From the NCBI GenBank assembly GCA_964234715.1, contig OZ174275.1: a DNA stretch of 64,000 nucleotides; one strand, 5' to 3'. Shown here piece after piece: positions 1 through 61,239 of the stretch (the first letter of the stretch is position 1; the number at the start of each line of letters is the position of its first letter). The notes under the pieces are model-generated. The model was not told the DNA's origin. It was given only the letters and a program-made list of their open reading frames with translations, and ran no database searches. The translations under genes and the position numbers were made by a program. The stretch is from Podarcis melisellensis (lineage: Eukaryota).

Positions 1-103
1 GTGCCAGTTAGCTACTAGGCTATTTTCAAAGTGCTGATTTTGGTGTTTAAAGCCTTATACAACTTGGGACCAAGGTGCCTGAAAGATGGTTTCACTCCTT
101 ATA
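1..103 (+). mobile_element. L2-clade LINE ORF2 C-terminal fragment, duplicate of 16224-16326
   Basis: Translates to an L2-like AIFKVLILVFKALYNLGP motif; 102/103 identical to 16224-16326. Confidence 0.8.
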
Positions 104-330
104 CAGTGGTACCTCGGGTTAAGTACTTAATTCGTTTTGGAGGTCTGTTCTTAACCTGAAAACTGTTCCTAACCTGAAGCACCACTTTAGCTAATGGGGC
201 CTCCTGCTGCTGCCACGCCGCCGGAGCATGATTTTTGTTCTCATCCTGAAGCAAAGTTCTTAACCCGAGGTACCATTTCTGGGTTAGCGGCGTCTGTAAC
301 CTGAAGCGTCTTTAACCTGAGGTACCACTA
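104..330 (+). mobile_element. Tc1/mariner (pogo/Tigger-type) MITE, family copy 1 (chimeric)
   Basis: Left TIR CAGTGGTACCTCGGGTTA after TA at 102-103; right end AACCTGAGGTACCACTA (last base mutated); internal TAACCTGAAG modules; related copies at 16327, 33335, 35988, 47682. Confidence 0.92.
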
Positions 331-2369
331 CACATGTTTGTTTTTGACGTGTAAGTGGCAATATGTGTATGAAAATATGAGACACCACTTAGAGGTGAAT
401 GTTCTTATGAACATAGTATTATGCTGACCCATACCATAGGCTACAAGATTGCTACATTCCTTCATAAAATCTGTACAAGTGGCATATTTAAAGGGTTAGC
501 CGGTGACTCTGCTCCTCTTTAACTAACTCTTTCTCTATTTCCCACCTCCCTTCTCTTTATTTTAGGAATAGTGAAGTGATCTGGATTGAACTTCATGAAG
601 TATGGTTCTAAGGGATAGCTGGCTTTGCGCTCACTGGGCATGGCAGAGCACAAGAAGGTGCTTGGTTGTGCTTGCTCTCTTATTATTACACACATCTGAT
701 TTGGAAGGCAGGAAATCGCATCCATTTGTCTGGAAAACAGGTAGGGATGTGCATATTCTTCCTTACTGTGACTGTGATTCTGTGTGAGTTTAGGCCAGTG
801 GTCCCCAAACATTTACCTCCATGGTCCACTGGAAAATTGTTGCGGGTGTTGGAGGTCCACTTAATGATTTTACCTATCTGTTGTAGCAATTATAATGTAC
901 TGTATGTTTTTTTTAAATATCAAACATCTTAATTTTAGCTCCTGGTTAACTTTGGTGCTACTCCTTTCCTCCGCTTTCAAGTACCTCTTCCTCTTGTCAC
1001 TTCCAATTTGTCCTCTTCACCTTCCAGGTGACAATGCTCCTGCTGTTCTTCACAGGTGTGCAGCAGAGCACCTGAATGAAGCTTGTGGATCATGATTTGG
1101 GAATCCCTAACTTAGATACATTGAGCCAAACTGCCTTTTCAGAATATCAGGTGGTTCAAGCTCTTCAGAACATAGATGAAGTTGACTCCTCTGAGTATAA
1201 ATCTTTCTTCATGTAAAAACAAATTAGTAAGTGTGGGGCTAGATGCCATCTTCTTGATAGACTAGCTTTCCACATGCATTTTTTTTTAAAAAAAAATTGG
1301 CATGGGAGTATGAAGATACCCCTACACATTTTCCCCACCTGTATTCTGGTATAATTCCAGGGGGCCGTACTGCACATTTTACTTGAAGCTGTAGAGGAAA
1401 AAAGATGAATAGTTTCAAAGATGCATAAGATAAAAATAAAAAAACTTTCAAATTTAACCTGCTAGGTGGGCCTACAGTAGTTAAGGACTACTATGTACAA
1501 CTTGAAGGAAGACCAGAGGAGAGAGGTTTGGACAAATTTAAATTCATGCATTTCTTTGGCAGAGTGACCGATTTTTGCACATGAACAGAGCAGGAATTAG
1601 TCTACATCTGCAAGTTGTACAAGGGGAAGTGGTCATTCCCTGAAGCAATCAGCCCATAATTTGAGTTTTAGTAGTTAATCAAGCATAGCTCTTCAAAGTC
1701 ATTCTGGGTTTATGCCAAGACAAAGTGGTGGTTTCTTTCTCCCTCCACCCCACAAGTTTGGGTTTCTGTAGGTTCAAATGCCTTGTTATATCTGGAGTGC
1801 CACATGTTCACCATCCCTGGGACTTCATTCAAAAAATTTCAAGGGACTGGAGGCAAGGGGAACAAATATATCCAACAAAATCTTAAAGAGATGTAAGACT
1901 GACCACTATTCTTTTTTACTGTAGTATCTTAACTTGATGTCCCAAATTATATCACACCTAAAAGATGCCTTAAAGATAAATATGTGTAACAGACTATGCA
2001 TCTCATTCTTTTTTCATTCAAAAAAGGCATAACGTATATTTCACTAACCTTGCCTGTCTTGTCCAACAAGTAGCAAATGCAAAAGCAGTCTTATTGGGAT
2101 TTCTCAAGGCCACCTTTCTTTGCTTACCTCTGACAGTTTAAACAATAAGTTCATCACTTGTTGGTTTAGAAGAAGAAGAAAACTTTGCCTGAGCCTTCCC
2201 CAAGGGTATGTTTATATATAATTATGTCTTCTCTGAGTATGACATAATCAGATACAGCTCAATAACACAAGAATAAAATACCACTAAAATCATAAAAATA
2301 TGATAGAACAATCACAACAAATAGTAGCAGTTCCTACATAACACCCTCCCCAAAAAACTTGACTAGCTT

Positions 2370-15679: not shown

Positions 15680-16700
15680 AGAACATGGGGTGAGGTGCTC
15701 TCAATTGCTGATGATATCCAGTTCTGCTTTCCTGTAACATCTGAATCAGGAGAGGCTGTGCAAGCTCTGGACTGGTGCCTGAATTCAGCAGTGAGCTGGA
15801 TGGGGGACAATAAACTGACTCTGAATCTTGGCAAAATGGTGGGATTGTGGGTGGTTCCCTAGTCCAGGTAATTGGTCAATTTCCTGCTTTGGAAGGGGGT
15901 CATCCTTCCCTTGAAAGAGCAGGTTCATAATCCAGGGCTTCTCCTGGATCCATCTTTATCACTAGAGACCCAGATGACCTCAGTGGCTAGGAGAGCCTTC
16001 TGCCAGCTACAGGTGGGAAGACAGCTACCACCATATCTGCACCAGGGTAGCTGGACCGCTGTCATCCATGCTTTGGTAACATCCATCTGTATTTGGGTGT
16101 GCTGCATTTTGGGTTGCCCTTGAGGTTGGTGCAGAAGCTGTAGCTGGTGCAAAATGCGGCAGCTGGACTGCTCACTGGGGCAGGATATTGCCAATGCATC
16201 ACCTCACTCTTGAAAGATTTGCAGTGCCAGTTAGCTACTAGGCTATTTTCAAAGTGCTGATTTTGGTGTTTAAAGCCTTATACAACTTGGGACCAAGGTG
16301 CCTGAAAGACGGTTTCACTCCTTATACAGTGGTACCTCGGGTTAAGTACTTAATTCATTCCGGAGGTCTGTTCTTAACCTGAAACTGTTCCTAACCTGAA
16401 GCACTACTTTAGTTAATGGGGCCTCCTGCTGCTGCCGTGCCGCCGGAGCACGATTTCTGTTCTCATCCTGAAGCAAAGTTCTTAACCTGAAGCACTATTT
16501 CTGGATTAGCGGGGTCTGTAACCTGAAGCGTATGTAACCCGAGGTACCACTGTATACCCAACCAACCTCCACACTCTGTAGGTGAAGGCCTTCTGCAGCT
16601 ATCAACGTATCAAGTAGCTAGTTCCACACAGTGTAGGAATTGGGCCTTTAATGTTGTAGCAACTTTGGGATTCCCCTCCCCTTGAATATTAGCTGTCATC
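15680..16700 (+). mobile_element. L2-clade LINE ORF2 fragment (RT end and C-terminus), interrupted by a MITE
   Basis: ADDIQ (YADDTQ-like), VIHALVTS, LVQNAAAGLLTG, ITSLLKDL, FKVLILVFKAL motifs with stops and frameshifts. Confidence 0.88.
16327..16552 (+). mobile_element. pogo/Tigger-type MITE copy 2
   Basis: TA-CAGTGGTACCTCGGGTTA...TAACCCGAGGTACCACTG-TA; the L2 host continues on both sides. Confidence 0.95.
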
Positions 16701-20751: not shown

Positions 20752-20890
20752 NNNNNNNNNNNNNNNNNNNNNNNNNNNNNNNNNNNNNNNNNNNNNNNNN
20801 NNNNNNNNNNNNNNNNNNNNNNNNNNNNNNNNNNNNNNNNNNNNNNNNNNNNNNNNNNNNNNNNNNNNNNNNNNNNNNNNNNNNNNNNNN
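20752..20890. other. Assembly gap (139 N)
   Basis: Run of N. Confidence 1.
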
Positions 20891-31680: not shown

Positions 31681-33334
31681 TGCCTGGCTTGCATGAATTT
31701 CCAGCAGGAAATGAGGTCTGCCAATGTGATTGTGGTCAAACATTTACTTATTCTTGGAGCACACTGATTATTAACATTCATTCCCATCTGGCTTTCAGCC
31801 TCAGTTTTGCCTTGGAGAGTCAATGGATGTTGGGAGTGCAAATCTGCTACTTCTCCTGCATTCACTTCAACTGGGTCAGTTCAACTACTCAGCGAGTCAC
31901 CTCCACAAGGTTTCTTTTAGTTGTGACTTGTACATTCTGGTCTTCTTCATGGAGCCTGTGATTCCAGTAGATGATTTCTTTCTGCCTTTGGAAATTGGCT
32001 GGAACTAAGACAATAAATAAGTAACACAGATTAATTAAATCAACTTTCACTCTTCTTTGGTACTAAGTTATTATACACGAAATTGTCCAGATCTGATAAA
32101 TCTGACAGGTGTAATCAGTGGTTGTTTAAAGGCATTCAGTACCATTTCCCATTTCTGTGTAATGAGCTCTTTTGAGTAAGAGCCACCTTCATCAGATGCG
32201 ACTGGCGACATGGGTTCTGGCCATAAATATATTCATGCCACAGTAAACCAGTTAATTGCTAAGAACACCGTGTTCTCATACGATTTTTTTTTTTGGTCAC
32301 TATAAGTTTCATTCTTTTGTCTTGGACCAAAATCTTTGTTTCCAAGGCCATTACTATACTCTAAGAGCTCTATTAAGTCCCTAGGCAATAATGCTGTGAT
32401 GTCTGTATAATTACGCTATCATACATTTAATAAACTACAGATTGCTCATTTTCTGAACACATAAAGTGCAAATTGCAAAATGCATTTGTCCTTCCCTATG
32501 CTGAACACTTACAAGTACATGGTCTTATTCCGCTCCACCTTCAAAATTTAAAAGAGAGGATATATCTAGTTCATGTTTATGCTGTAGTTTGATTAAAGTT
32601 GGAATTGTTTGTTTTTGTGTGTGTGCAGCATTTTTGAGATGTGGGGGGATGTTCTTTTGGCTATTGTTGAGTCTTCAAATCATAGTGCCAGATTCTTCCA
32701 CAATGGAATGACTGAAACAGAAAAATTGAAATGATAGCAATTGTAAATGTTTAAATATTTTGTGGTATTTCAAAGAGATACAGAGGTTTGTCCCATTCTT
32801 TAGCACCACAAGTGAACCAGAAGCGCACCTCATATCAACAAGGAGTTCGGACTTCCGTGTATAGTGGGCCTAACTCTGTTGAATCCCCTCCCATCAGAAA
32901 TCAGGCTGCTGAGTTTCAGGTATAGAAGTTTTTATTTCAGTAGGCCTTTGCATTTTGAACATTGCTCTAATGTTTCTATTTTCTGATGTTTTAGCATATG
33001 TTTTGAACCTTGCACATTGTGTGGTTTTGTTGCTTCCCTTCTGTAAGTCATTTTGAGACATAGTGAAAAGTGGGGTGTGTGAATTCCTTAAATGAATGGA
33101 TAAATTCAAAACGTCTCATTTTCAATTTCTCATAAGTAAAATAATCAGGTAGTAATATATGTCATTCTAATGTTCCACACAAGTGCTGTCCTGGAGATGG
33201 AGAGGGTAGAGAATCAGACCTAAGAACAGGCATTTATCTGGATGCTCAAAAGGTCACTGGCAAATCTCATCTGGTAAAGCAACCAGCTATGCTTTCAACA
33301 TTTAATTTTCCCCAATATCATCAAAAAACAAATA

Positions 33335-33576
33335 CAGTGGTACCTTGGGTTACATACGCTTCAGGTTACATACGCTTCAGGTTACAGACTCTGCTAACCC
33401 AGAAATAGTGCTTCAGGTTAAGAACATTGCTTCAGGATGAGAACAGAAATTGTGCTACGGCGGCATGGCGGCATCAGGAGGCCCCATTAGCTAAAGTGGC
33501 ACCTCAGGTTAAGAACAGTTTCAGGTTAAGTACGGACCTCCGGAACGAATTAAGTACTTAACCCGAGGTACCACTG
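33335..33576 (-). mobile_element. pogo/Tigger-type MITE copy 3
   Basis: Both TIRs intact with TA TSD; opposite orientation to copies 1 and 2; extra 16-bp GGTTACATACGCTTCA module. Confidence 0.95.
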
Positions 33577-35987
33577 TATAGATCCATACTTTTTTTTTGT
33601 GGGTGGGGGAAGCAGTATGTTGAGATGCAATGCATTGTTGACAACTTTGTTATCTAGTCAGCAGACCACTTGGCCTGTGGCACATTAAGAAGCTTCTAGT
33701 ACATACTCCCTTTTCTTCCCTTTGTCTCCTTCTCCTTCCTCAATAAACAATCAGAGAAGTGTGAAGGCAAATTTCCAGGCAGTCCTCGGTATAATTCTTC
33801 TGTGCTGCTTTGCAATCTACTTTCGAATGTGGTGGGATAATAAATCCACAGTGTGTGTGCAAGCCCCTGGGTGAGCATATAACCCGCAAGAAGTAGTTTT
33901 CTGTTGTAAACCGATTACCTCTAAGCAGGCAAGAAAAGGAGGGTTAGTTATTCCCACAACTCCTAGCCATAATGAGGTTGAAGGATGAGCTGTGGGATAC
34001 ATAATTTGCCGTGTTGTAATACTTTCAAAACTTGTTTGGGCCTGTAAGATAGTTCACTTGATATTTAGGATTGAAATAAAATCAACCAGGTGCCAGATCA
34101 ATGCTTTTGGGCTGCGGCATATACCCATGGCAGTGTCGGGGGCATTTCCCAGCCAAAGGAATGCACACACAGTTAACTCTTTATTGTCAAAACTGACACA
34201 GTAGTTTCTATGGCTCTGAATACTCACCCAGGCTAGCATCTAGGCAACTATTCTCAGGTCTGCACTCTATGGAAGAGTTGCAGCAACAGGGGGGCCACAC
34301 TCCCCTCCATCAGTTTATGTACCCCCCCCCCACATGGGCTGTTTGCACACAGCTCCCTCTACCCATCTTTCTTCAATCTCCTCCTGCAGTGGTGTGGAAG
34401 CATATAACCCTTCACTTGCCTGGCCTGTCTCTTTCTCATCTTTTGACCCTGTTCTGTGCTCCTACCTCCAGCTCTGAAGCTTCCCTTGCCTCTCACTCTT
34501 GCCTCCTGGCTGGTACCATTCCCTACAAATCACTGACCCCCTCTCTTGATTCAGACTCTAGCCTCCCTTCCCCCTGGTGCACACTAATCAGCATCTTGCC
34601 AGCCCCTGACATGAGGCATCCAACTAACACATTCCATAAGTGCAAAGATTTGTGCTTGTGCAAAAAAATCACTGCTCTGCCCTCCACGATTCCTAAACCT
34701 GTTCTAGAGGTTATCCCAACCTTCTGGAGCAGATTTGGGGAGGGTATGGGGGTGCACAGGAAGAGAAGAGGGGGAAATGTTCTGTTGCACGAGTACAAAT
34801 CCTTGTGCTGGCATGATGTGTTAATTAGATACTACCCACAATCTCCGCTGTGTATAGAGTCGCTTCATACGTGCAGTTAACTCAGGCAAATTCAGGTATA
34901 TGTACAGTACTTGGCAAAAAAGTGCTCTGCAATAGGAAGCCTACTGCAACAGTTCCTGCAAAGGCATCTAGGAATCTTTTGTTTTCCTTGTTTCTCCTTC
35001 CCTCTAACTAGCATCCCACCCTCCAATTTTAGGATTCACATCCCCCCCCCCCAAGTGCTGGAAGGTCCAGCAGTTGCCCATAGAATATGGTGGTGGTTAG
35101 GTCAGCCTTTAGGCATCCCTGCAGGGCTTCCCCCCAGCTTGCCAAGTGGTAGCCACTGCCTGTCATGGCCCCACCAGCTCCTGAGCCGTCTCCCGGTCCA
35201 CCAGTTCACCTAGCTCTTGCTTGCTGGCCTCAGGAAGCCACAGTGACTGAGGGAGGAATAGGTGGAGGCATGGCCTCTGTGTAAACAAACAGTTGGTGCC
35301 CTCAGGATAGACAGGGAAGTGAGAGTGAACCAAAAGACTCCTTATAGCCCAGGGTCCCCTCCCCAAGCACAGGGCATTCATAAGCGGAGTGTACTTTGAT
35401 GAATTTTCAAGCATACTGTGATTTTTACTATTTGTGTTTTTCGCTTTATTCGCTGAATTTAGAACCTACTCCCCACGTAAAAGCTGATTCTGCTGCACTC
35501 TGTGGATGTTAATATAGGAAAAGAAATCCAACTAAAATAAGAAAATGAAGCCTGTCAGCTATTTACAGCTGGGTAGTTACTGAATTTTTCTAATAATGAT
35601 GCAGGCTCTTCGTAAAACTGCTTTTGTTTCTGTTTTAACTAACTGAGTAAATTAACTCCCAGGCACTCATTTTGACTCAGAACACCATGTGCCCATGGAT
35701 CTCCTCAGTGTGGAGGCTTCCTCATATGTTTCAAATGGAGACGGGAGCTCTACTGTTTGGTTATGTGATTACAGGCATTTCATAGCTCCGGTAAAAATTG
35801 TATGTCCCATGCCAAATGCTCTGGGCAAGTTTCTTGACCTTTTCATTCACTTAAAAAGTTCTCCAGCATTTTGAAATTATTTATACCCTCTTTAGGCTCT
35901 TCAGCTGGGTTTAATTCTTGCCGAGCAAATGTTGCAATTGCAGCTAACACAATTCATTCAATTATTTGATTGTATCAATATGCAATA

Positions 35988-36229
35988 CAGTGGTACCTTG
36001 GGTTACATACGCTTCAGGTTACATACGCTTCAGCTTACAGACTCCGCTAACCCAGAAATAGTGCTTCAGGTTAAGAACTTTGCTTCAGGATAAGAACAGA
36101 AATCGTACTCTGGCGCTGTGGCGGCAGCAGGAGGCCCTATTAGCTAAAGTGGTGCTTCAGGTTAAGAACGGTTTCAGGTTAAGAACAGACCTCCGGAATG
36201 AATTAAGTACTTAACCTGAGGTACCACTG
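35988..36229 (-). mobile_element. pogo/Tigger-type MITE copy 4
   Basis: Both TIRs intact with TA TSD; 242 bp, same subtype as copy 3. Confidence 0.95.
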
Positions 36230-37319
36230 TATACTTGTACGCTTCCTTCTCTGCAAGGAGTGTTTCATCTTATTATTCTACTGTCTCCAGAAAGACTTTT
36301 TTTGGGGGGGTGAGTAAATAGAGAGAATAATGGTTTTAAATTTGCTCTTTCTTTTGGCACATGACCAGTGGTTGTATTGATGGAGTCAATGATTAAAAAT
36401 ACAGTTATAATGAACACAGCTATTTTTTTTTTGCTTTGTTTTATTTCAGTATGAAAGAGCAGAAAAATAATAATATAAACCCAAACAAGTTTTGAAAATA
36501 TAACAGCAGTGTACATTTCTGAAAATACAGAAATGATTTTTTAGAAGTACATTTATCATGGTATTTCTTTTAATTTGCACTCCTGCTGTACTACAAATGT
36601 AATAACCATCAAAATGAAAAATGCAACAGATTGATAATACCATTGAGTTTTAATTAAAGCACTGAATTGAAAAAGGCCCAGATGGATAACAGGATAATGT
36701 AGTTATAACCCTGTTATGAAAAATGCTGGGCTGCCAGTTATAGCATCTTATAAATAAAATGTATGCCAAAATAACATAGTTTTTTTTAGAAGACTACCCA
36801 AAAATTAATCATTTAAGTCTGCAAAACAGATGGTTTCTCTGTTTTATTTGGTTTGTCTGAAAGGCACAGATCTCTTTAAATCAGTAAATGTTCCATTCCT
36901 CCCAATTGCCCAGATCCCTCTCCAGCTACTCCATCCAGTTCTGTCACTACTGGTTCACAGTTGTAAAATCTCTGAAACATTAAACTCTGAAAGGTCAGTA
37001 GGTGTTTGTATCTGACTATTTAGCATACTGAAATACTAATGGAGTTTAAAACAGAAAGCAAGTACTGCAACCATACGTCTTGTCTACTTAGAGGTATGCC
37101 CAATTGATTTCAGTGGGATCTACTCTCCAGTGGGTGTGCATAGCATTGCAGCCTGAATATCTCATGATGGCTATAAAACCTGTGTCTCCATCGCAGGTGG
37201 CATTGTGCCCTGTTCAACTATTGCTATCTGTGACATTGCTGTCACTAACTATATTAAAGGAAGTCACCATCCACATCTGAAAACCACTCAGCGATGAAAG
37301 CCATATGCCACTGCTATGT

Positions 37320-43822: not shown

Positions 43823-45900
43823 CTCAGACTGCAAGGTGTAAGGAAAGATCAATAGTTGCTTCTGAGAGCAATTTTTAAAATATTATGTAAAGAAATCTGT
43901 TTGCTGGAGGCGATTTTGACTCCCGTCATGGGGAATAACTAAGGGAATAGTTGCTATATTTCCATCTGAAAAACCCCCAGAGCTTTTCTGTTATATTGGG
44001 GTGGAGAACTCCAGGCCCAGGAGCCAAACCTGCAGTCTTCTCTACCTGGCCTCAGAACCCTCACGCAGTGAGGGCCCAGATGTTCTTCAGATTGTAGCTT
44101 GGCTTCTGTTTAAATCCGTGCATGAAAAGCAGCTTGCCCTGCACCCTTCGGCCCATGAATCCACACCCCACACCTCAGCTTTTGCATAGAAAATTACAGT
44201 AATTGCCTCAACTGTCTCATGAATCCTAGCAGGGTCCAAGAATTAAGCAAATGTTACCTACTGCCTTTCTTGCTCTGCTTGCCGTTGCACAGTTTTGCAT
44301 CATCTAAAACTCATTTAGTTGATTGATATAGCAATAAAAATACATTTACTAGCAGCCAAGATAAAAAGCTTTGCTAAACAGTCTTTGTCAAATACGAATC
44401 TTCTTCACATGATTTCATCTCCCCCCCTTTTTTTAAAGGAAAAAAAAGACAAGGGCTCAGTAGGGAGGAAAAAAACAGGATACCTGACAACCTTACAGCA
44501 GATGAGAGATTGTTTTCAGCATGGGAATATCAATTCATAGAATTTAAAGCGATAACATTTTGTATGATAAGGGCTGGAAAACAAACCAAAACCAGCAGGT
44601 AGTAACCATAAATGTTTCAAAATGATTCAACAGCAATGCATAATAGGGCCAGCGCAAGACATGTCGATGTTTGAGCCAAGGGGAGTCACCACTCTCCCTC
44701 TTCTCCGCCATGGCTCCCCCTTCTCGCTCCCTGTTTACTTCTAAATGTTTTCCTCCTGTTAACTTGGAGGGATTGTGCCACCCTCTCTTTGCCCTGTCCC
44801 CTCTACCTTGCTCTGAGGATGCAAAGGTGGGCTTTCCTCAGAGCAAGACATTCTGGGAGAGGAGGCTTAGGAGAGTGCTATTTGGCCACAAAGGTAACTT
44901 TTTATTATTTAGAAAAAAAATTGCACCTTGCCCATGGTGCTTAACACTGAGTAATGGCTTGTGTGGGAAGCCATGTATTGGCCAAGGGCTCTGATTGGTG
45001 GCAGCAGCAATGCACTTGCTGCTGAACGGTGTCTCAGCACAAATAGATAGCACCAGTCTATAGCTGTACGAAATCTATAGATTCCATAGATCTGTGGGCC
45101 AGACCGTTCCATTTTGGGTGAGTGAAAACGGCACATTTCCCCTGTGGATGGAAGCAGCCCCACTGCGTGCCTGTAACTACAATTGGCACCCGAGGGTCTG
45201 CTGGGAGGGCAGTGACTGGCAGTGCAGTGAGGAACCCTTCTTACTCCTCAGGGCCCCAGCCAATGCCCAACCTGACTGACTGCTGGCACCTGATAATGGA
45301 GACCTGATAGATGCAGTTTTCTTCCCTGAGTGCGCAGCTGCTGTAATGCACATTAGTTTGGGGCGTGTTGGAGGGAGGGGTGTGACATTCTGTGATACTG
45401 AGCCACAGAACATACCGTTGGATGGTACTGCAGGTTATGTTGCTCTCTGTCATATTTGAGCATTTTATACAAACTCTTGCAAGACATCCTTAGGAAGTCA
45501 ATTTTAAGTATCTCAGTGTCTTATCACAATGGAAGAAGACCTCTAGCACCCGAATGAACTCATTAAAGGGCAGATCCTGCTGTGCACCATCCAGCCACAG
45601 CTTTGTGCTTAATTCAAAACAGTAACCTGTGTGGGAAGAGGCTTTGTGTGTGAAAGGGGCAGTTGCGTCTGTTTCAAAAGTATATCAGTGTGGTGTTGCA
45701 TTGCGTAGGCAAAGGAAAAGTGAAATAGCAATTGTGAAATCTCCTCCCTTCCCTTGAAGAAAATGATACGGTTGAAATCTACTCAGCTTCGATGATACCC
45801 TGTCATCTGTGAGACACAGTAAGAGGACAGTGATTTGAAGGGAAAAGGTGGTGCAAATCAGTGATCTCTCCACCCACCCTGCAAGAAAATATCTTTAATA

Positions 45901-47230
45901 CAGTGGTGCCCCGCTAGACGAATGCCTCGCAAGACGAAAAACCCGCAAGACGAAAGGGTTTTTCGGTTTTTGCGACACTTCGCTAGACGATTTTCCCTAT
46001 GGGCTTGCATCGCAAGACGAAAGCCCATAGGGAAATCTCGGGGACCTTTTTTTAAATGCTGGCGGTGGGGAGGAAAGCCTTCCCCCCCCTCCGGACTTCA
46101 GAAGAGGTCCAGGAAGGCCGGCGGGGGCGAAAGGCTTTGCTCCCCACCGCCAGCATTTTAAAAGCGGTCCGGGATAGCAGGGAAGCGCTTCCCGCTATCC
46201 CGGACGGCTTTTGAAGGCAGGCAGGGGGGGCAAAGACTTTTGCCCCCCCTGCCTGCCTAACCGGGGGCTTTTAAATCGCCCCGGGACTGTCCGGGGCGAT
46301 TTAAAAGCCCCCGGACGGCTTTTGAAGCCTCCCCCCCGCCCGGCTTCGGGGCATCATCCCGATGCCGGGCGGTGGGGCAGGAACGCCTCCCCCAGCCGCC
46401 CGGCTTTGGAACGATGTCCCGAAGCCGGGCGGCCGGGCGGGAAAGCCTCCCCCCCCGCCCGGCTTCGGGGCATCATCCCGATGCCGGGCGGTGGGGCAGG
46501 AACGCCTCCCCCAGCCGCCCGGCTTCGGGGCATCGTCCCGATGCCGGGCGGTGGGGCAGGAAAGCCTCCCCCAGCCGCCCGGCATCGGAACGATGTCCCG
46601 AAGCCGGGCGGCCGGGCGGGAAAGCCTCCCCCCCCGCCCGGCTTCGGGGCATCGTCCCGATGCCGGGCGGTGGGGCAGGAACGCCTCCCCCAGCCGCCCG
46701 GCATCGGAACGATGTCCCGAAGCCGGGCGGCCGGGCGGGAAAGCCTCCCCCCCCGCCCGGCTTCGGGGCATCGTCCCGATGCCGGGCGGTGGGGCAGGAA
46801 CGCCTCCCCCAGCCGCCCGGCATCGGGGCATCGTCCCTATGCCGGGCGGTGGGGCAGGAACGCCTCCCCCAGCCGCCCGGCATCGGGGCATCGTCCCGAT
46901 GCCGGGCGGTGGGGCAGGAAAGCCTCCCCCAGCCGCCCGGCATCGGAACGATGTCCCGAAGCCGGGCGGCCGGGCGGGAAAGCCTTTGTCCCCCCTGCCT
47001 GCCTTCCCAGGGGCTTTTAAATCGCCCCGGACAGCGGAGAAGTCCTCCGCTGTCCCGGGCGATTTTAAAATGCCGCCCGCCAGAAGAGGTCGGGGGAAGG
47101 CTTTTTCCATAGGAACGCATTAATTGATTTTCAATGCATTCCTATGGAAAACCGTGCATCGCAAGACGAAAAACTCGCAAGACGAAGAGACTTGCGGAAC
47201 GAATTAATTTCGTCTTGCGAGGCACCACTG
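45901..47230. mobile_element. Intact non-autonomous Tigger/pogo-like DNA transposon, 1330 bp, with hairpin-rich interior
   Basis: TA(45899-45900)-CAGTGGTGCCCCGCTAGACGAA ... TTCGTCTTGCGAGGCACCACTG-TA(47231-47232); multiple subterminal CGC(A/T)AGACGA repeats; no transposase ORF. Confidence 0.93.
46327..46985. repeat. GC-rich minisatellite of 11 ~59-60-bp palindromic units
   Basis: Unit order A B A A B A B A A A B; A core GGGGCATCGTCCCGAT, B core GGAACGATGTCCCGAA. Confidence 0.95.
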
Positions 47231-47554
47231 TAATCAGAACACCAGTGGGTTTCAGTTGGTGGCTGAGCTTGAAGGAGTATACTCTTTATCACTTTCCCTG
47301 TAACTTAGGTAACTTGAGAGCTGAATCTCCTGCCCACATTTAATTTAGTAAAGCCAAAATGTCTTTTGCTTATTCCGTTTGATAAAGGGCCTTGCTCATG
47401 GTAAGACCTTGTCACATCCCTGGCATGGTAAATACCATCTTTTACCACATGGGGGAGTATTGGCAAGAAATACGCATCACATGAGACTGGCAAAGTAGAA
47501 TAGTCTTGTGATTAATCTGACCATTAACTGGTTTTAAAATAGCAGCCCACAGGC

Positions 47555-47680
47555 AATTTCAGCCCTTGGATTTTATGGTGGTGGTGGTGGGAATCTTACC
47601 TGTTCCTAATTCTGGCCTGAACCCCGATTGATTTGGGTCTAGATTTGGTTCATAATGCCTTGCAGTTCTTAACACCATAT
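47555..47680 (-). mobile_element. L2-like LINE RT fragment
   Basis: LDPNQSGFRP is the conserved LINE RT N-terminal motif. Confidence 0.65.
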
Positions 47681-47681
47681 A

Positions 47682-47886
47682 CAGTGGTACCTCAGGATAA
47701 GAACTTAATTCGTTATGGTGGTCCGTTCTTAACCTGAAACTGTTCTTAACCTGAGGTACCACTTTAGCTAATGGGGCCTCCCGCTGCCACTACACGATTT
47801 CTGTTCTCATTCTGAAGCAAAGTTCTTAACCCGAGGTACTATTTCTGGGTTAGCGGAGTCTGTAACCTGAAGGGTCTGTAACCCGA
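47682..47886 (+). mobile_element. pogo/Tigger-type MITE copy 5, right TIR truncated
   Basis: Left TIR after TA; ends GTAACCCGA, lacking GGTACCACTG-TA. Confidence 0.9.
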
Positions 47887-49249
47887 TTTTAGTGATTTTA
47901 GTTACACTTTTGTGGTTCGTTTTGTTACGATTCCATTTCTTACTTATTAGTACAGGGCTACAAGAAGGTGGTGTCAAAATCCAAAACAACCTAATGCTAA
48001 AATTCATTAGAAATTGTTTGTGCGTTAACCTTAAATGTATTTTAAGTGATGAACAATTCCACACACAAATTTAAACTAGCTTATACAACTCTGAACATGT
48101 CTTAGGGCTATAACGTTGGGATGTGGGTCAATACTTTCTTCTCATTCCTTCTCTGGCTGGGTTTTGTTCTGCATCAATAATATCTTTGCCCCTTTGACAT
48201 TGAGGAAAACATGACACTTTTTTCGGTCATACTCTGCTGCCTCATAGGCGTTTTCCTACAGATTTACATCTCCAAACTTGGGTATTCAGTCATGGGAGTA
48301 AAAATATGTGTTGAGTACAATTCTGCTTTGCTATAATCTAGCACAGGGGTTCCCAAAGCGACCACCAGAGGTCTGTGAGCTTCATTCATGTGGTCAGCAT
48401 GGGTGACATTTCTGTGTGCTAACTTAACAGCCAGTGAGGTTTTCTGTTATGCAGAGAAAGATATATCAGGCTAATACTCATAACAGGACTGGTAGACTTC
48501 ATTTTTAATTTTGTATTTCTGAACAGAATAGTTGGATGTGTTTTATTATATTTAATTATTTGAAGGGGAAAGACATTTTAATGCTGTTGCTTGGGGATTC
48601 TAAATGCATTAGCAAAGGACTGGCTCTAATTAATTCCACAGTCTATGATAATTATCAAGTAAAGCAGCCTCATAAAAGCATACAATTACATTGAAGCAAA
48701 TGCATATTTGATCATTAATTAGTAAACCATCAAAAGCAACGCTGCAGATGTTTGTCGTTTTGTATAACAGAATTAAATCTGGTCACAGTAATCATGGTAT
48801 ACCTAAATGGGTATCTTGGCAGCAGCAATAATTTTGAAGCCTTTATGTGGTCGATTTCCTGCAGTGTATGTTTATGGTAATGTGTTTACATATGTCTGAG
48901 CATGTTGAAGTGTTAATCTGCTGCTGGGGTGGCTATCCTCCAGAAGCTCCTACTTCCATCAGCCCCTGCCCCCATAGCCAGGATGATGATCAAAAGAGCC
49001 ATAGGTCATCCATCCCTGATCTGTTACAAGCCTAGGTGTACTTGGTTAAAATCACCAACTCTACACCACACACAGAAGTGCTGTCTCTCTCACACTCTTG
49101 CACACACACACACATGGGCTGTCCCAGATGCTGTACTGTATATCCCATGATACTTGGTTTTAATGATGTTTATGCTAGGTACAAGTATCCTGTGTACAGT
49201 ACCCCGTGCAGTATTATTTAACACCATTCCCCCTATTTCTGAAGTTCAG

Positions 49250-61090: not shown

Positions 61091-61239
61091 GGATAGATAG
61101 CTCAGTTGGTTAGAGCGAGGTACTGATAATGCCAAGGTTGCAGGTTTGATCCCTGTAAGGGACAGCTGCATATTTCTGCATCGCAGGGGGGTTGGACTAG
61201 ATGATCCTCGGGATCCCTTCCAACTCTGCAATTCTATGA
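61091..61239 (+). mobile_element. tRNA-Ile-derived SINE with CR1 3' tail
   Basis: TAGCTCAGTTGGTTAGAGCG...CTGATAATGCCAAGGTTGCAGGTTTGATCCC head, then GGTTGGACTAGATGATC...CCCTTCCAACTCT...ATTCTATGA. Confidence 0.88.

What the first reader, a model, noticed from the sequence alone, without database searches (positions are those of the whole stretch)
45901..47230. Young Tigger/pogo-like element whose cargo is a chain of hairpins
Seen: between intact TIRs almost every segment is a local inverted repeat. Examples are TTTCCCTATGGG/CCCATAGGGAAA (~45992-46034), AAATGCTGGCGGTGGGG/CCCCACCGCCAGCATTT (~46054-46158), TCCGGGATAGC/GCTATCCCGGA (~46168-46204), AGGCAGGCAGGGGGG/CCCCCCTGCCTGCCT (~46216-46258), TTTAAATCGCCCCGG/CCGGGGCGATTTAAA (~46270-46305) and a further one at ~47018-47070. 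CpGs are almost undecayed against a CpG-poor background. Inference: a recent non-autonomous insertion that grew by repeated foldback/template-switch synthesis during gap repair, and that delivers a portable CpG-island-like, cruciform-prone domain into a putative regulatory landscape.
Basis: partly seen in the sequence, partly recalled or inferred. Interest (0 to 1): 0.75.

Follow-up and report, generated by a model that had tools for sequence, protein, structure and literature searches.

The report
Young hairpin-filled Tigger-like lizard transposon
This is a real, recently inserted, non-coding "cut-and-paste" jumping gene of a many-copy lizard family. Its interior is a string of GC-rich hairpin-forming modules plus an 11-copy 60-base repeat. 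It is an unusual-looking but essentially ordinary relative of known repeat-carrying miniature transposons.

Summary
Window 45901-47230 is a 1330-bp element with 22-bp terminal inverted repeats (20/22) and a TA duplication. It holds 15 perfect local hairpins, against 7 in the other 62.7 kb and 0.035 in shuffles. CpG obs/exp is 0.93 against 0.20.

Single contigs from three other lizard samples cross the site exactly without the element and with one TA. The insertion is therefore lineage-specific and young. Its ends, hairpin modules and repeat unit are all multicopy in four runs, and the same module junctions occur in another species. The hairpin chain was therefore inherited from a family and did not grow at this locus.

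The termini match published autonomous Tigger TIRs, but no autonomous partner could be tested.

Marks of inverted duplication, hairpin-tip inversion and tandem amplification are visible. A link to gap repair is not testable here. Nothing supports a regulatory role.

The closest known kind is the tandem-repeat-bearing Tc1/mariner MITE (Xenopus miDNA4, Xstir, clam DTC84).

First readers of this scan noted similar hairpin/minisatellite Tigger-like elements at five or more other places in this genome (unchecked).

Interest is modest.

The parts
45899..45900 (.). Left TA target-site duplication
   Evidence: Empty-site contigs keep only one TA (table 8).
45901..45922 (+). Left terminal inverted repeat, CAGTGGTGCCCCGCTAGACGAA
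   Evidence: It matches the right TIR at 20 of 22 positions. No majority difference from family contigs was listed for these positions (table 3).
45907..46022 (+). Left subterminal region with five copies of the 11-bp motif CGCAAGACGAA (at 45912, 45928, 45944, 45981 and 46011). These include a 16-bp x3 tandem at 45907-45954. They are putative transposase-binding sites.
   Evidence: The motif occurs 8 times in the element and never elsewhere in the window at <=1 mismatch.
45992..46035 (.). Hairpin H1: 15-bp perfect stem, with one CGCAAGACGA motif in its 14-nt loop
46042..46170 (.). Hairpin H2: 58-nt arms, 86% complementary. Its interior (46061-46129) is 77% similar to the array unit.
   Evidence: (I4).
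46167..46205 (.). Hairpin H3: 12-bp outer stem plus the inner palindrome GGGAAGCGCTTCCC
46199..46327 (+). Block of hairpins H4 (46215-46258, 20-bp stem) and H5 (46261-46314, 24-bp stem). It is bounded by an 18-bp direct repeat, CCCGGACGGCTTTTGAAG, at 46199-46216 and 46310-46327.
46327..46981 (+). Minisatellite of 11 units of 58-60 bp, each a near-palindrome. The order is P Q P R Q P Q P R R Q. The 19-bp core of Q units is the reverse complement of the P/R core (17/19).
46985..47030 (+). Direct repeat (91% over 46 bp) of 46239-46284 (3' arm of H4 plus 5' arm of H5). The two copies bracket the array.
47010..47068 (.). Hairpin H5': the same outer stem as H5, but with an extra 11-bp inner hairpin at 47029-47055
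47104..47152 (.). Hairpin H1' (TTTTCCATAGGAA...TTCCTATGGAAAA), the counterpart of H1
47155..47208 (+). Right subterminal region: two CGCAAGACGAA motifs (47160, 47176) and the core that reads TTAATTCGTTCCG on the minus strand
47209..47230 (-). Right terminal inverted repeat, CAGTGGTGCCTCGCAAGACGAA on the minus strand
47231..47232 (.). Right TA target-site duplication

Best explanation
A 1330-bp non-autonomous cut-and-paste DNA transposon of the Tc1/mariner-pogo group with Tigger-type ends. It belongs to a many-copy family of lacertid-type lizards. It inserted at a TA in unique, non-coding DNA after the window's lineage split from three sampled relatives.

Inferred: a Tigger-type transposase supplied in trans moves it. 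That transposase would recognise the 22-bp TIRs and the eight subterminal CGCAAGACGAA motifs.

The interior is not a one-off cargo. It is the family's own modular body: GC-rich palindromic modules separated by short conserved linkers. One H2-like module has been amplified into an 11-unit 60-bp minisatellite.

Inferred from sequence marks: the modules arose in ancestral copies by inverted duplication (snap-back or template-switch synthesis). The hairpin tip then inverted between the stem arms, and tandem amplification and unequal exchange followed. Copies differ by loss and reshuffling of modules.

At this locus the element simply adds 1.3 kb of CpG-island-like, cruciform-prone DNA rich in Sp1 core motifs. 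No function is shown.
For: Transposon identity:
- TA|CAGTGG...CCACTG|TA with 20/22 TIRs.
- The first 15 bases equal the TIR of an autonomous Tigger (CAGTGGTGCCTCGCATAAAGAAC, 571-aa transposase, TA/TA) listed in the supplement of PMC9219625.
- A TACAGTGGTACCTCGG MITE is called Tigger-like in PMC4678618.

Recent insertion:
- Single contigs in X4 (record 9), X5 (record 16) and X8 (record 23) run 45200-45898 and continue directly at 47231.
- The flanks of those contigs differ from the window by about 1.6-2% (table 8).
- CpG obs/exp is 0.93 against 0.20.
- Stems of 15, 20 and 24 bp are perfect.

Family membership:
- Summed contig depth is about 1e6 at the ends, 1e5 over the hairpins and 1e4-8e4 over the array, against 10-64 in the flanks, in all four runs (table 2).
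- Contigs from another species cover 46091-46229 (H2-H3-H4 junctions, 7 mismatches), 47030-47125 (2 mismatches) and 47119-47217 (0 mismatches) (table 8).

Modular change between copies:
- One joint, 46215->46251, removes H4.
- Several joints run backwards between modules (tables 5 and 5c).

Marks of inverted duplication, inversion and amplification:
- The Q-unit core is the reverse complement of the P/R core at 17/19, against 12/19 read directly.
- H2 is 77% similar to the array unit.
- An 18-bp direct repeat flanks H4+H5, and a 46-bp direct repeat (91%) flanks the array.

Non-coding: no Pfam match for its ORFs and no Rfam family above half its threshold.
Against: - No autonomous partner with this TIR was found or testable. 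The Tigger assignment therefore rests on TIR resemblance and the TA duplication alone.
- Depth summed over Logan contigs is not a copy number.
- No full-length second copy could be read, so how fixed the interior is remains known only from short contigs.
- None of the four runs is the window's own individual. All four differ from the window at 45246, 45654 and 45658. The array length and the interior order of this particular copy are therefore not independently verified.
- The mechanism that built the hairpins is inferred from end products only.
Confidence: 0.75

Rival explanations
1. One reading: this particular copy grew its hairpins by repeated foldback synthesis during double-strand gap repair after excision events.
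For: The palindromes are near-perfect with short asymmetric spacers. The cores are inverted in four units. Direct repeats lie at block borders. Template switching during gap filling is documented for TIR elements (PMC8277862).
Against: The same modules and junctions occur at high depth and in another species, so they predate this insertion. Nothing separates gap repair from replication-fork template switching or slippage.
Confidence: 0.15
2. Pack-TIR type capture: the GC-rich interior is host DNA, such as a CpG-island promoter or a GC-rich satellite, picked up between Tigger ends.
For: GC is 67% and CpG obs/exp is 0.93. There are 27 GGGCGG/CCGCCC motifs, against 8 in the rest of the window. 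Multicopy Pack-TIRs tend to carry GC-rich DNA (PMC8277862). Array depth is 10-100 times lower than end depth, so the array is carried by a minority subfamily.
Against: There is no exon-like or protein-like content. The interior is built from palindromes related to each other and to the ends: H1 and H1' contain the terminal motif, and H2 resembles the array unit. No single-copy parent could be sought.
Confidence: 0.07
3. The interior, or the array length, is an assembly artefact.
For: GC-rich palindromic arrays are hard to sequence and assemble. No contig spans the interior.
Against: Short-read contigs from four independent runs contain the hairpin and array words. The boundaries are exact, with TA duplication and matching empty sites.
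Confidence: 0.05
4. The hairpins are a functional RNA cluster (miRNA or hairpin small-RNA precursors) carried by the transposon.
For: Many stems are of pre-miRNA size. Rfam gives weak generic matches to dozens of unrelated miRNA families.
Against: All matches are below half of the gathering scores and scatter over unrelated families. No RNA holder was found among the indexed runs. The stems are perfect DNA palindromes on both strands, as replication products would be.
Confidence: 0.05

Closest known systems
miDNA4, a Tc1/mariner MITE of Xenopus tropicalis with an internal satellite motif (Scalvenzi and Pollet, as summarised in PMC12628747 and PMC9659126)
   Same: It is a vertebrate, TA-inserting, non-autonomous Tc1/mariner-group element. 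Its interior holds a tandem repeat present as one or several copies. Short direct repeats flank the repeat and are proposed to drive changes during replication or repair.
   Different: Here the repeat unit is itself a GC-rich palindrome with inverted-core variants. The rest of the interior is a chain of further palindromes. The ends are Tigger-type. No satellite arrays free of TIRs were looked for.
DTC84 / pearl-type tandem-repeat-containing MITEs of bivalves (PMC3879986)
   Same: The build is modular: flanking 'cassette' sequences enclose an ordered array of repeat variants. Each repeat has a palindrome, proposed as the hotspot for length change. Every copy differs.
   Different: DTC84 has an AA target duplication, a microsatellite tail and up to five AT-richer repeats. 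It is not of the Tc1/mariner-pogo group.
Autonomous Tigger (pogo superfamily) elements surveyed in PMC9219625
   Same: TA duplication and TIRs of 17-26 bp in squamates. TIRs start CAGTGGTnCCTCG, and one insect Tigger shares the first 15 bases.
   Different: The element has no transposase gene. No lacertid autonomous element with this exact TIR was examined.
Foldback-type elements with repeat-built arms (Tetris of Drosophila virilis, PMC4079207; FB4 in PMC8277862)
   Same: The body is repeat-rich and prone to secondary structure and rearranges often. Tandem repeats are carried by a DNA transposon.
   Different: In foldback elements the long TIRs themselves are made of the repeats. Here the TIRs are short, and the palindromes are local and internal.

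Membership tests
Tc1/mariner-pogo group cut-and-paste transposon | TA target-site duplication | tested here: met
   TA lies on both sides. Empty sites in three samples keep a single TA.
Tc1/mariner-pogo group cut-and-paste transposon | Terminal inverted repeats starting CAG | tested here: met
   22-bp TIRs, 20/22, unique in the window.
Tigger (pogo superfamily) | TIR sequence of the kind found on autonomous Tiggers | tested here: met
   The first 15 bases are identical to the Colletes gigas Tigger TIR. There is also a close match to the Mesobuthus TIR, both listed in the supplement of PMC9219625. This is a resemblance only.
Tigger (pogo superfamily) | Mobilised by a DDE_1 / CENP-B-type transposase whose element carries the same TIRs | not testable with these tools
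   The window has no transposase relic: 118 ORFs of 80 aa or more gave no Pfam hits. An intact Tigger in this genome is reported only by scan note s1-498196, and its TIR is unknown.
MITE / non-autonomous element family | No coding capacity | tested here: met
   The only ORFs are open frames through the GC-rich array. They have no Pfam hit and no protein relatives.
MITE / non-autonomous element family | Many copies with the same ends | tested here: met
   Contig depth at the ends is about 1e6, against 10-64 in the flanks, in four runs. A 99-nt contig identical to 47119-47217 occurs in another species at depth about 15,000, against 18. Depth is not an exact copy number.
Tandem-repeat-containing MITE | Internal tandem array whose copy number varies between family members | tested here: inconclusive
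   The array of 11 units is shown. Variation between copies could not be read from 85-140-nt contigs. Scan notes list similar elements of 1626-2176 bp (unchecked).
Any Rfam RNA family | Score at or above the family's gathering threshold | tested here: not met
   The best match is 48 bits against a threshold of 100 (mir-8515). There are 111 weak matches spread over unrelated hairpin families.

The most novel reading that the evidence does not exclude
Lacertid lizards carry a still-active Tigger-derived lineage that elaborates itself by adding, inverting, shuffling and tandemly amplifying GC-rich palindromic modules. This would make it a 'hairpin-accreting' transposon. By transposing it would scatter unmethylated-looking CpG islands, cruciform-prone and rich in Sp1 core motifs, that can seed minisatellites and alter chromatin or replication at new sites. 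The compaction of extruded hairpins might be what lets a 1.3-2 kb non-autonomous element keep transposing efficiently.
Probability: 0.15. Interest if true: 0.6.

Novelty: new variant of a known kind. Interest (0 to 1): 0.35.

Why it matters
It gives a clean, datable case of recent DNA-transposon movement in a lizard lineage, with an exact empty site in three relatives. It also shows a transposon family whose body is almost entirely local palindromes, one of them caught in the act of becoming a minisatellite. If the family proves polymorphic and active, it could be used to study how palindromes and minisatellites arise and spread in vertebrate genomes, and whether mobile CpG-rich arrays change local methylation or gene regulation. 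As it stands it is one more member of the known association between MITEs and tandem repeats.

Tried and rejected
- Looked for other copies or an autonomous partner by scanning for the TIR pattern in metagenome, viral and prokaryote-genome collections. There were 0 hits in each.
- Searched the 269-aa open frame through the array against the protein collection, hoping to reach other lizard contigs. Nothing was found.
- Scanned 10 ORFs and then 118 ORFs of the whole window against Pfam for a transposase relic or a neighbouring gene. There were no hits.
- Ran Rfam at gathering and at permissive thresholds. Only a tRNA-like hit far away at 61098 and generic sub-threshold hairpin matches came back.
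- Searched papers for the TIR letters and for lacertid TE descriptions. This family was not described in the held library.
- Canonical G-quadruplex motifs: none on either strand.
- The X1 run neither bridges nor enters the element in the pieces shown. One contig ends 30 unshown letters after 45898 and the next starts at 47231. I left it as ambiguous and did not call heterozygosity.
- The many joints 47232->47676-47680 are cross-matches between this element's end and the neighbouring MITE's similar end. They are not deletions.
- Expression could not be tested.

Full report
**What is there**

Window 45901-47230 is a sharply bounded 1330-bp island. Its GC is 66.7% and its CpG obs/exp is 0.93. The surrounding DNA has 41.5% GC and CpG obs/exp 0.20. 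It begins CAGTGGTGCCCCGCTAGACGAA and ends with the reverse complement of CAGTGGTGCCTCGCAAGACGAA. These two ends match at 20 of 22 positions and are the only two matches in the window. TA flanks both sides.

A count of perfect hairpins (stem >=10 bp, loop 3-20 nt) gives:
- 15 in the element;
- 7 in the other 62,670 bp;
- a mean of 0.035 in shuffled versions of the element.

Single-strand DNA folding z-scores against dinucleotide shuffles are -23.5 (left arm), -12.2 (right arm) and -21.8 (array).

**Anatomy**

- Both ends carry an 11-bp motif, CGCAAGACGAA. There are five copies in the left 120 bp, two direct copies near the right end, and one inverted copy within the right TIR. The motif occurs nowhere else in the window. 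I infer these are transposase-binding sites.
- The left arm holds five hairpins, H1 to H5.
- An 18-bp direct repeat, CCCGGACGGCTTTTGAAG, brackets H4+H5.
- The centre, 46327-46981, is a tandem array of 11 units of 58-60 bp. Each unit is itself a near-palindrome, so the array folds at unit centres and at unit junctions alike.
- The units come in three forms, in the order P Q P R Q P Q P R R Q. This order explains the 119- and 179-bp higher-order periods.
- The 19-bp core of Q units matches the P/R core at 17/19 when reverse-complemented, but at only 12/19 directly. The outer parts of the units stay in direct orientation. The hairpin tip has therefore been inverted between its stem arms.
- H2 in the left arm is 77% similar over 73 bp to the array unit. 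The minisatellite is thus an amplified version of one of the hairpin modules.
- A 46-bp direct repeat (91%) of the H4/H5 border brackets the array.
- The right arm carries H5', which has the same outer stem as H5 plus an extra inner hairpin, and H1', the counterpart of H1.

**It is a true, recent transposon insertion**

Logan contigs of four public runs were laid on 45200-47930.
- In X4 (organism A), X5 (organism B) and X8 (organism E), a single contig runs 45200-45898 and continues directly at 47231. The element and one TA are exactly absent.
- The flanks of these contigs differ from the window by about 1.6-2%.
- All four runs share differences from the window at 45246, 45654 and 45658. None is therefore the window's own animal, and the insertion belongs to the window's lineage.
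- Elements of this group usually leave footprints on excision (established knowledge). A clean single TA in three lineages therefore means the site was never occupied there.
- X1 neither bridges nor enters the element in the pieces shown, and I leave it open.
- The undecayed CpGs and the perfect 15-, 20- and 24-bp stems agree with a young age.

**It is one copy of a family, and the hairpins belong to the family**

- Summed contig depth is 10-64 in the flanks. It is about 1e6 over the ends, about 1e5 over the hairpin arm and 1e4-8e4 over the array, in all four runs (table 2). This sum is not a copy number, but the contrast spans orders of magnitude.
- In organism B, one contig covers 46091-46229 across the H2-H3-H4 junctions with 7 mismatches. 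Others cover 47030-47125 (2 mismatches) and 47119-47217 (0 mismatches), at depths hundreds of times the flank depth (table 8).
- The module order therefore predates this insertion and is shared between species.
- Other contigs show a form lacking H4 (joint 46215->46251) and forms with modules joined in another order (tables 5, 5c). Copies therefore differ by whole modules.
- First readers of this scan noted elements of similar design at several other places in this genome: s1-508159, s1-511020, s1-515027, s1-508278 and s1-489294. These notes are unchecked and I could not read those sequences.

**Which superfamily**

- TA duplication and CAG-initial short TIRs place the element in the Tc1/mariner-pogo group.
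- The supplement of a Tigger survey lists autonomous, transposase-encoding Tiggers with TIRs CAGTGGTGCCTCGCATAAAGAAC and CAGTGGTACCTCGGTTCACGAAC. It also reports squamate Tiggers with 17-26-bp TIRs and TA duplications (PMC9219625).
- A Rhodnius MITE with TACAGTGGTACCTCGG is labelled Tigger-like (PMC4678618).
- This is resemblance, not proof. The window holds no transposase relic, and no other lizard DNA could be reached.

**How it most likely works**

- Shown: the element was inserted by cut-and-paste into a TA.
- Inferred: a Tigger-type transposase acting in trans binds the TIRs and the repeated CGCAAGACGAA motifs.
- The interior shows the end products of three processes:
  1. inverted duplication with short spacers (the palindromes);
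  2. inversion of a hairpin tip (Q against P/R units);
  3. tandem amplification with unequal exchange (the P(R)nQ super-units).
- Short direct repeats lie at block borders, as expected for microhomology-guided template switching. That process is documented for TIR elements (PMC8277862) and has been proposed for repeat-bearing MITEs (PMC12628747; PMC3879986).
- The sequence cannot say whether these events took place at replication forks or during repair of excision gaps.
- They happened in ancestral copies, not at this site.

**What is not supported**

- The 'regulatory landscape' has no support. No ORF of the window has a Pfam match.
- No Rfam family is matched.
- No RNA holder was indexed.
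- By composition the element does qualify as a CpG island. It carries 27 Sp1-core motifs (GGGCGG/CCGCCC), against 8 in the rest of the window. Methylation state and protein binding are unknown.

**Comparison and novelty**

- Non-autonomous elements with internal tandem repeats are a known kind. Examples are Xenopus miDNA4 (Tc1/mariner), Xstir and bivalve DTC84/pearl, the last with a palindrome in each repeat.
- This element differs in three ways. Nearly the whole body is local GC-rich palindromes. The repeat unit is a palindrome with inverted-core variants. The ends are Tigger-type.
- I rate it a new variant of a known kind. Repbase and Dfam could not be consulted, so it may already be catalogued there.
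- Interest is modest: a well-documented young insertion and a curious architecture, but no new principle.

Noticed in passing
window 47679-47886; also 101-330 and 16324-16551: A second, far more abundant MITE family lies here, with contig depth about 2e7 against about 60 in the flanks. Its terminal plan is the same as the studied element's right end: CAGTGGTnCCTCG + motif + TTAATTCGTT..G + two inverted copies of the motif. The motif differs, however: GGTTAAGAAC instead of CGCAAGACGAA. The TIR-internal and subterminal copies have changed together, as expected for sister families with diverged transposase-binding sites. The copy at 47681 lacks its right terminus.
   Followed up: partly
window 1-384 vs 16224-16551: Direct repeats at a 16,222-16,223-bp offset (98% over 161 bp, 91% over 170 bp) include one of the MITEs above.
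   Followed up: no
window 33331-33580 vs 35984-36233: A 250-bp direct repeat pair, 92% identical and 2.65 kb apart. Its nature was not examined.
   Followed up: no
window 61098-61156: A tRNA-like match (Rfam RF00005, 38 bits, model positions 8-63). It is probably the head of a tRNA-derived SINE rather than a tRNA gene.
   Followed up: no
window 45200-45898 and 47231-47709: All four best public runs share differences from the window at 45246, 45654, 45658 and 47342. The window's animal or taxon is therefore not among the runs laid. The closest run differs by about 1.1% in unique flanks.
   Followed up: partly
window 46006-46022 and 47155-47171: This copy has GCATCGCAAGACGAA at both places, where most family contigs read GCTTCGCAAGACGAA (places 46009 and 47158). 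The same change at two homologous sites suggests a subfamily marker or conversion between the two arms.
   Followed up: no
window 20752-20890: A run of 139 N (assembly gap or masked). It was left untouched.
   Followed up: no
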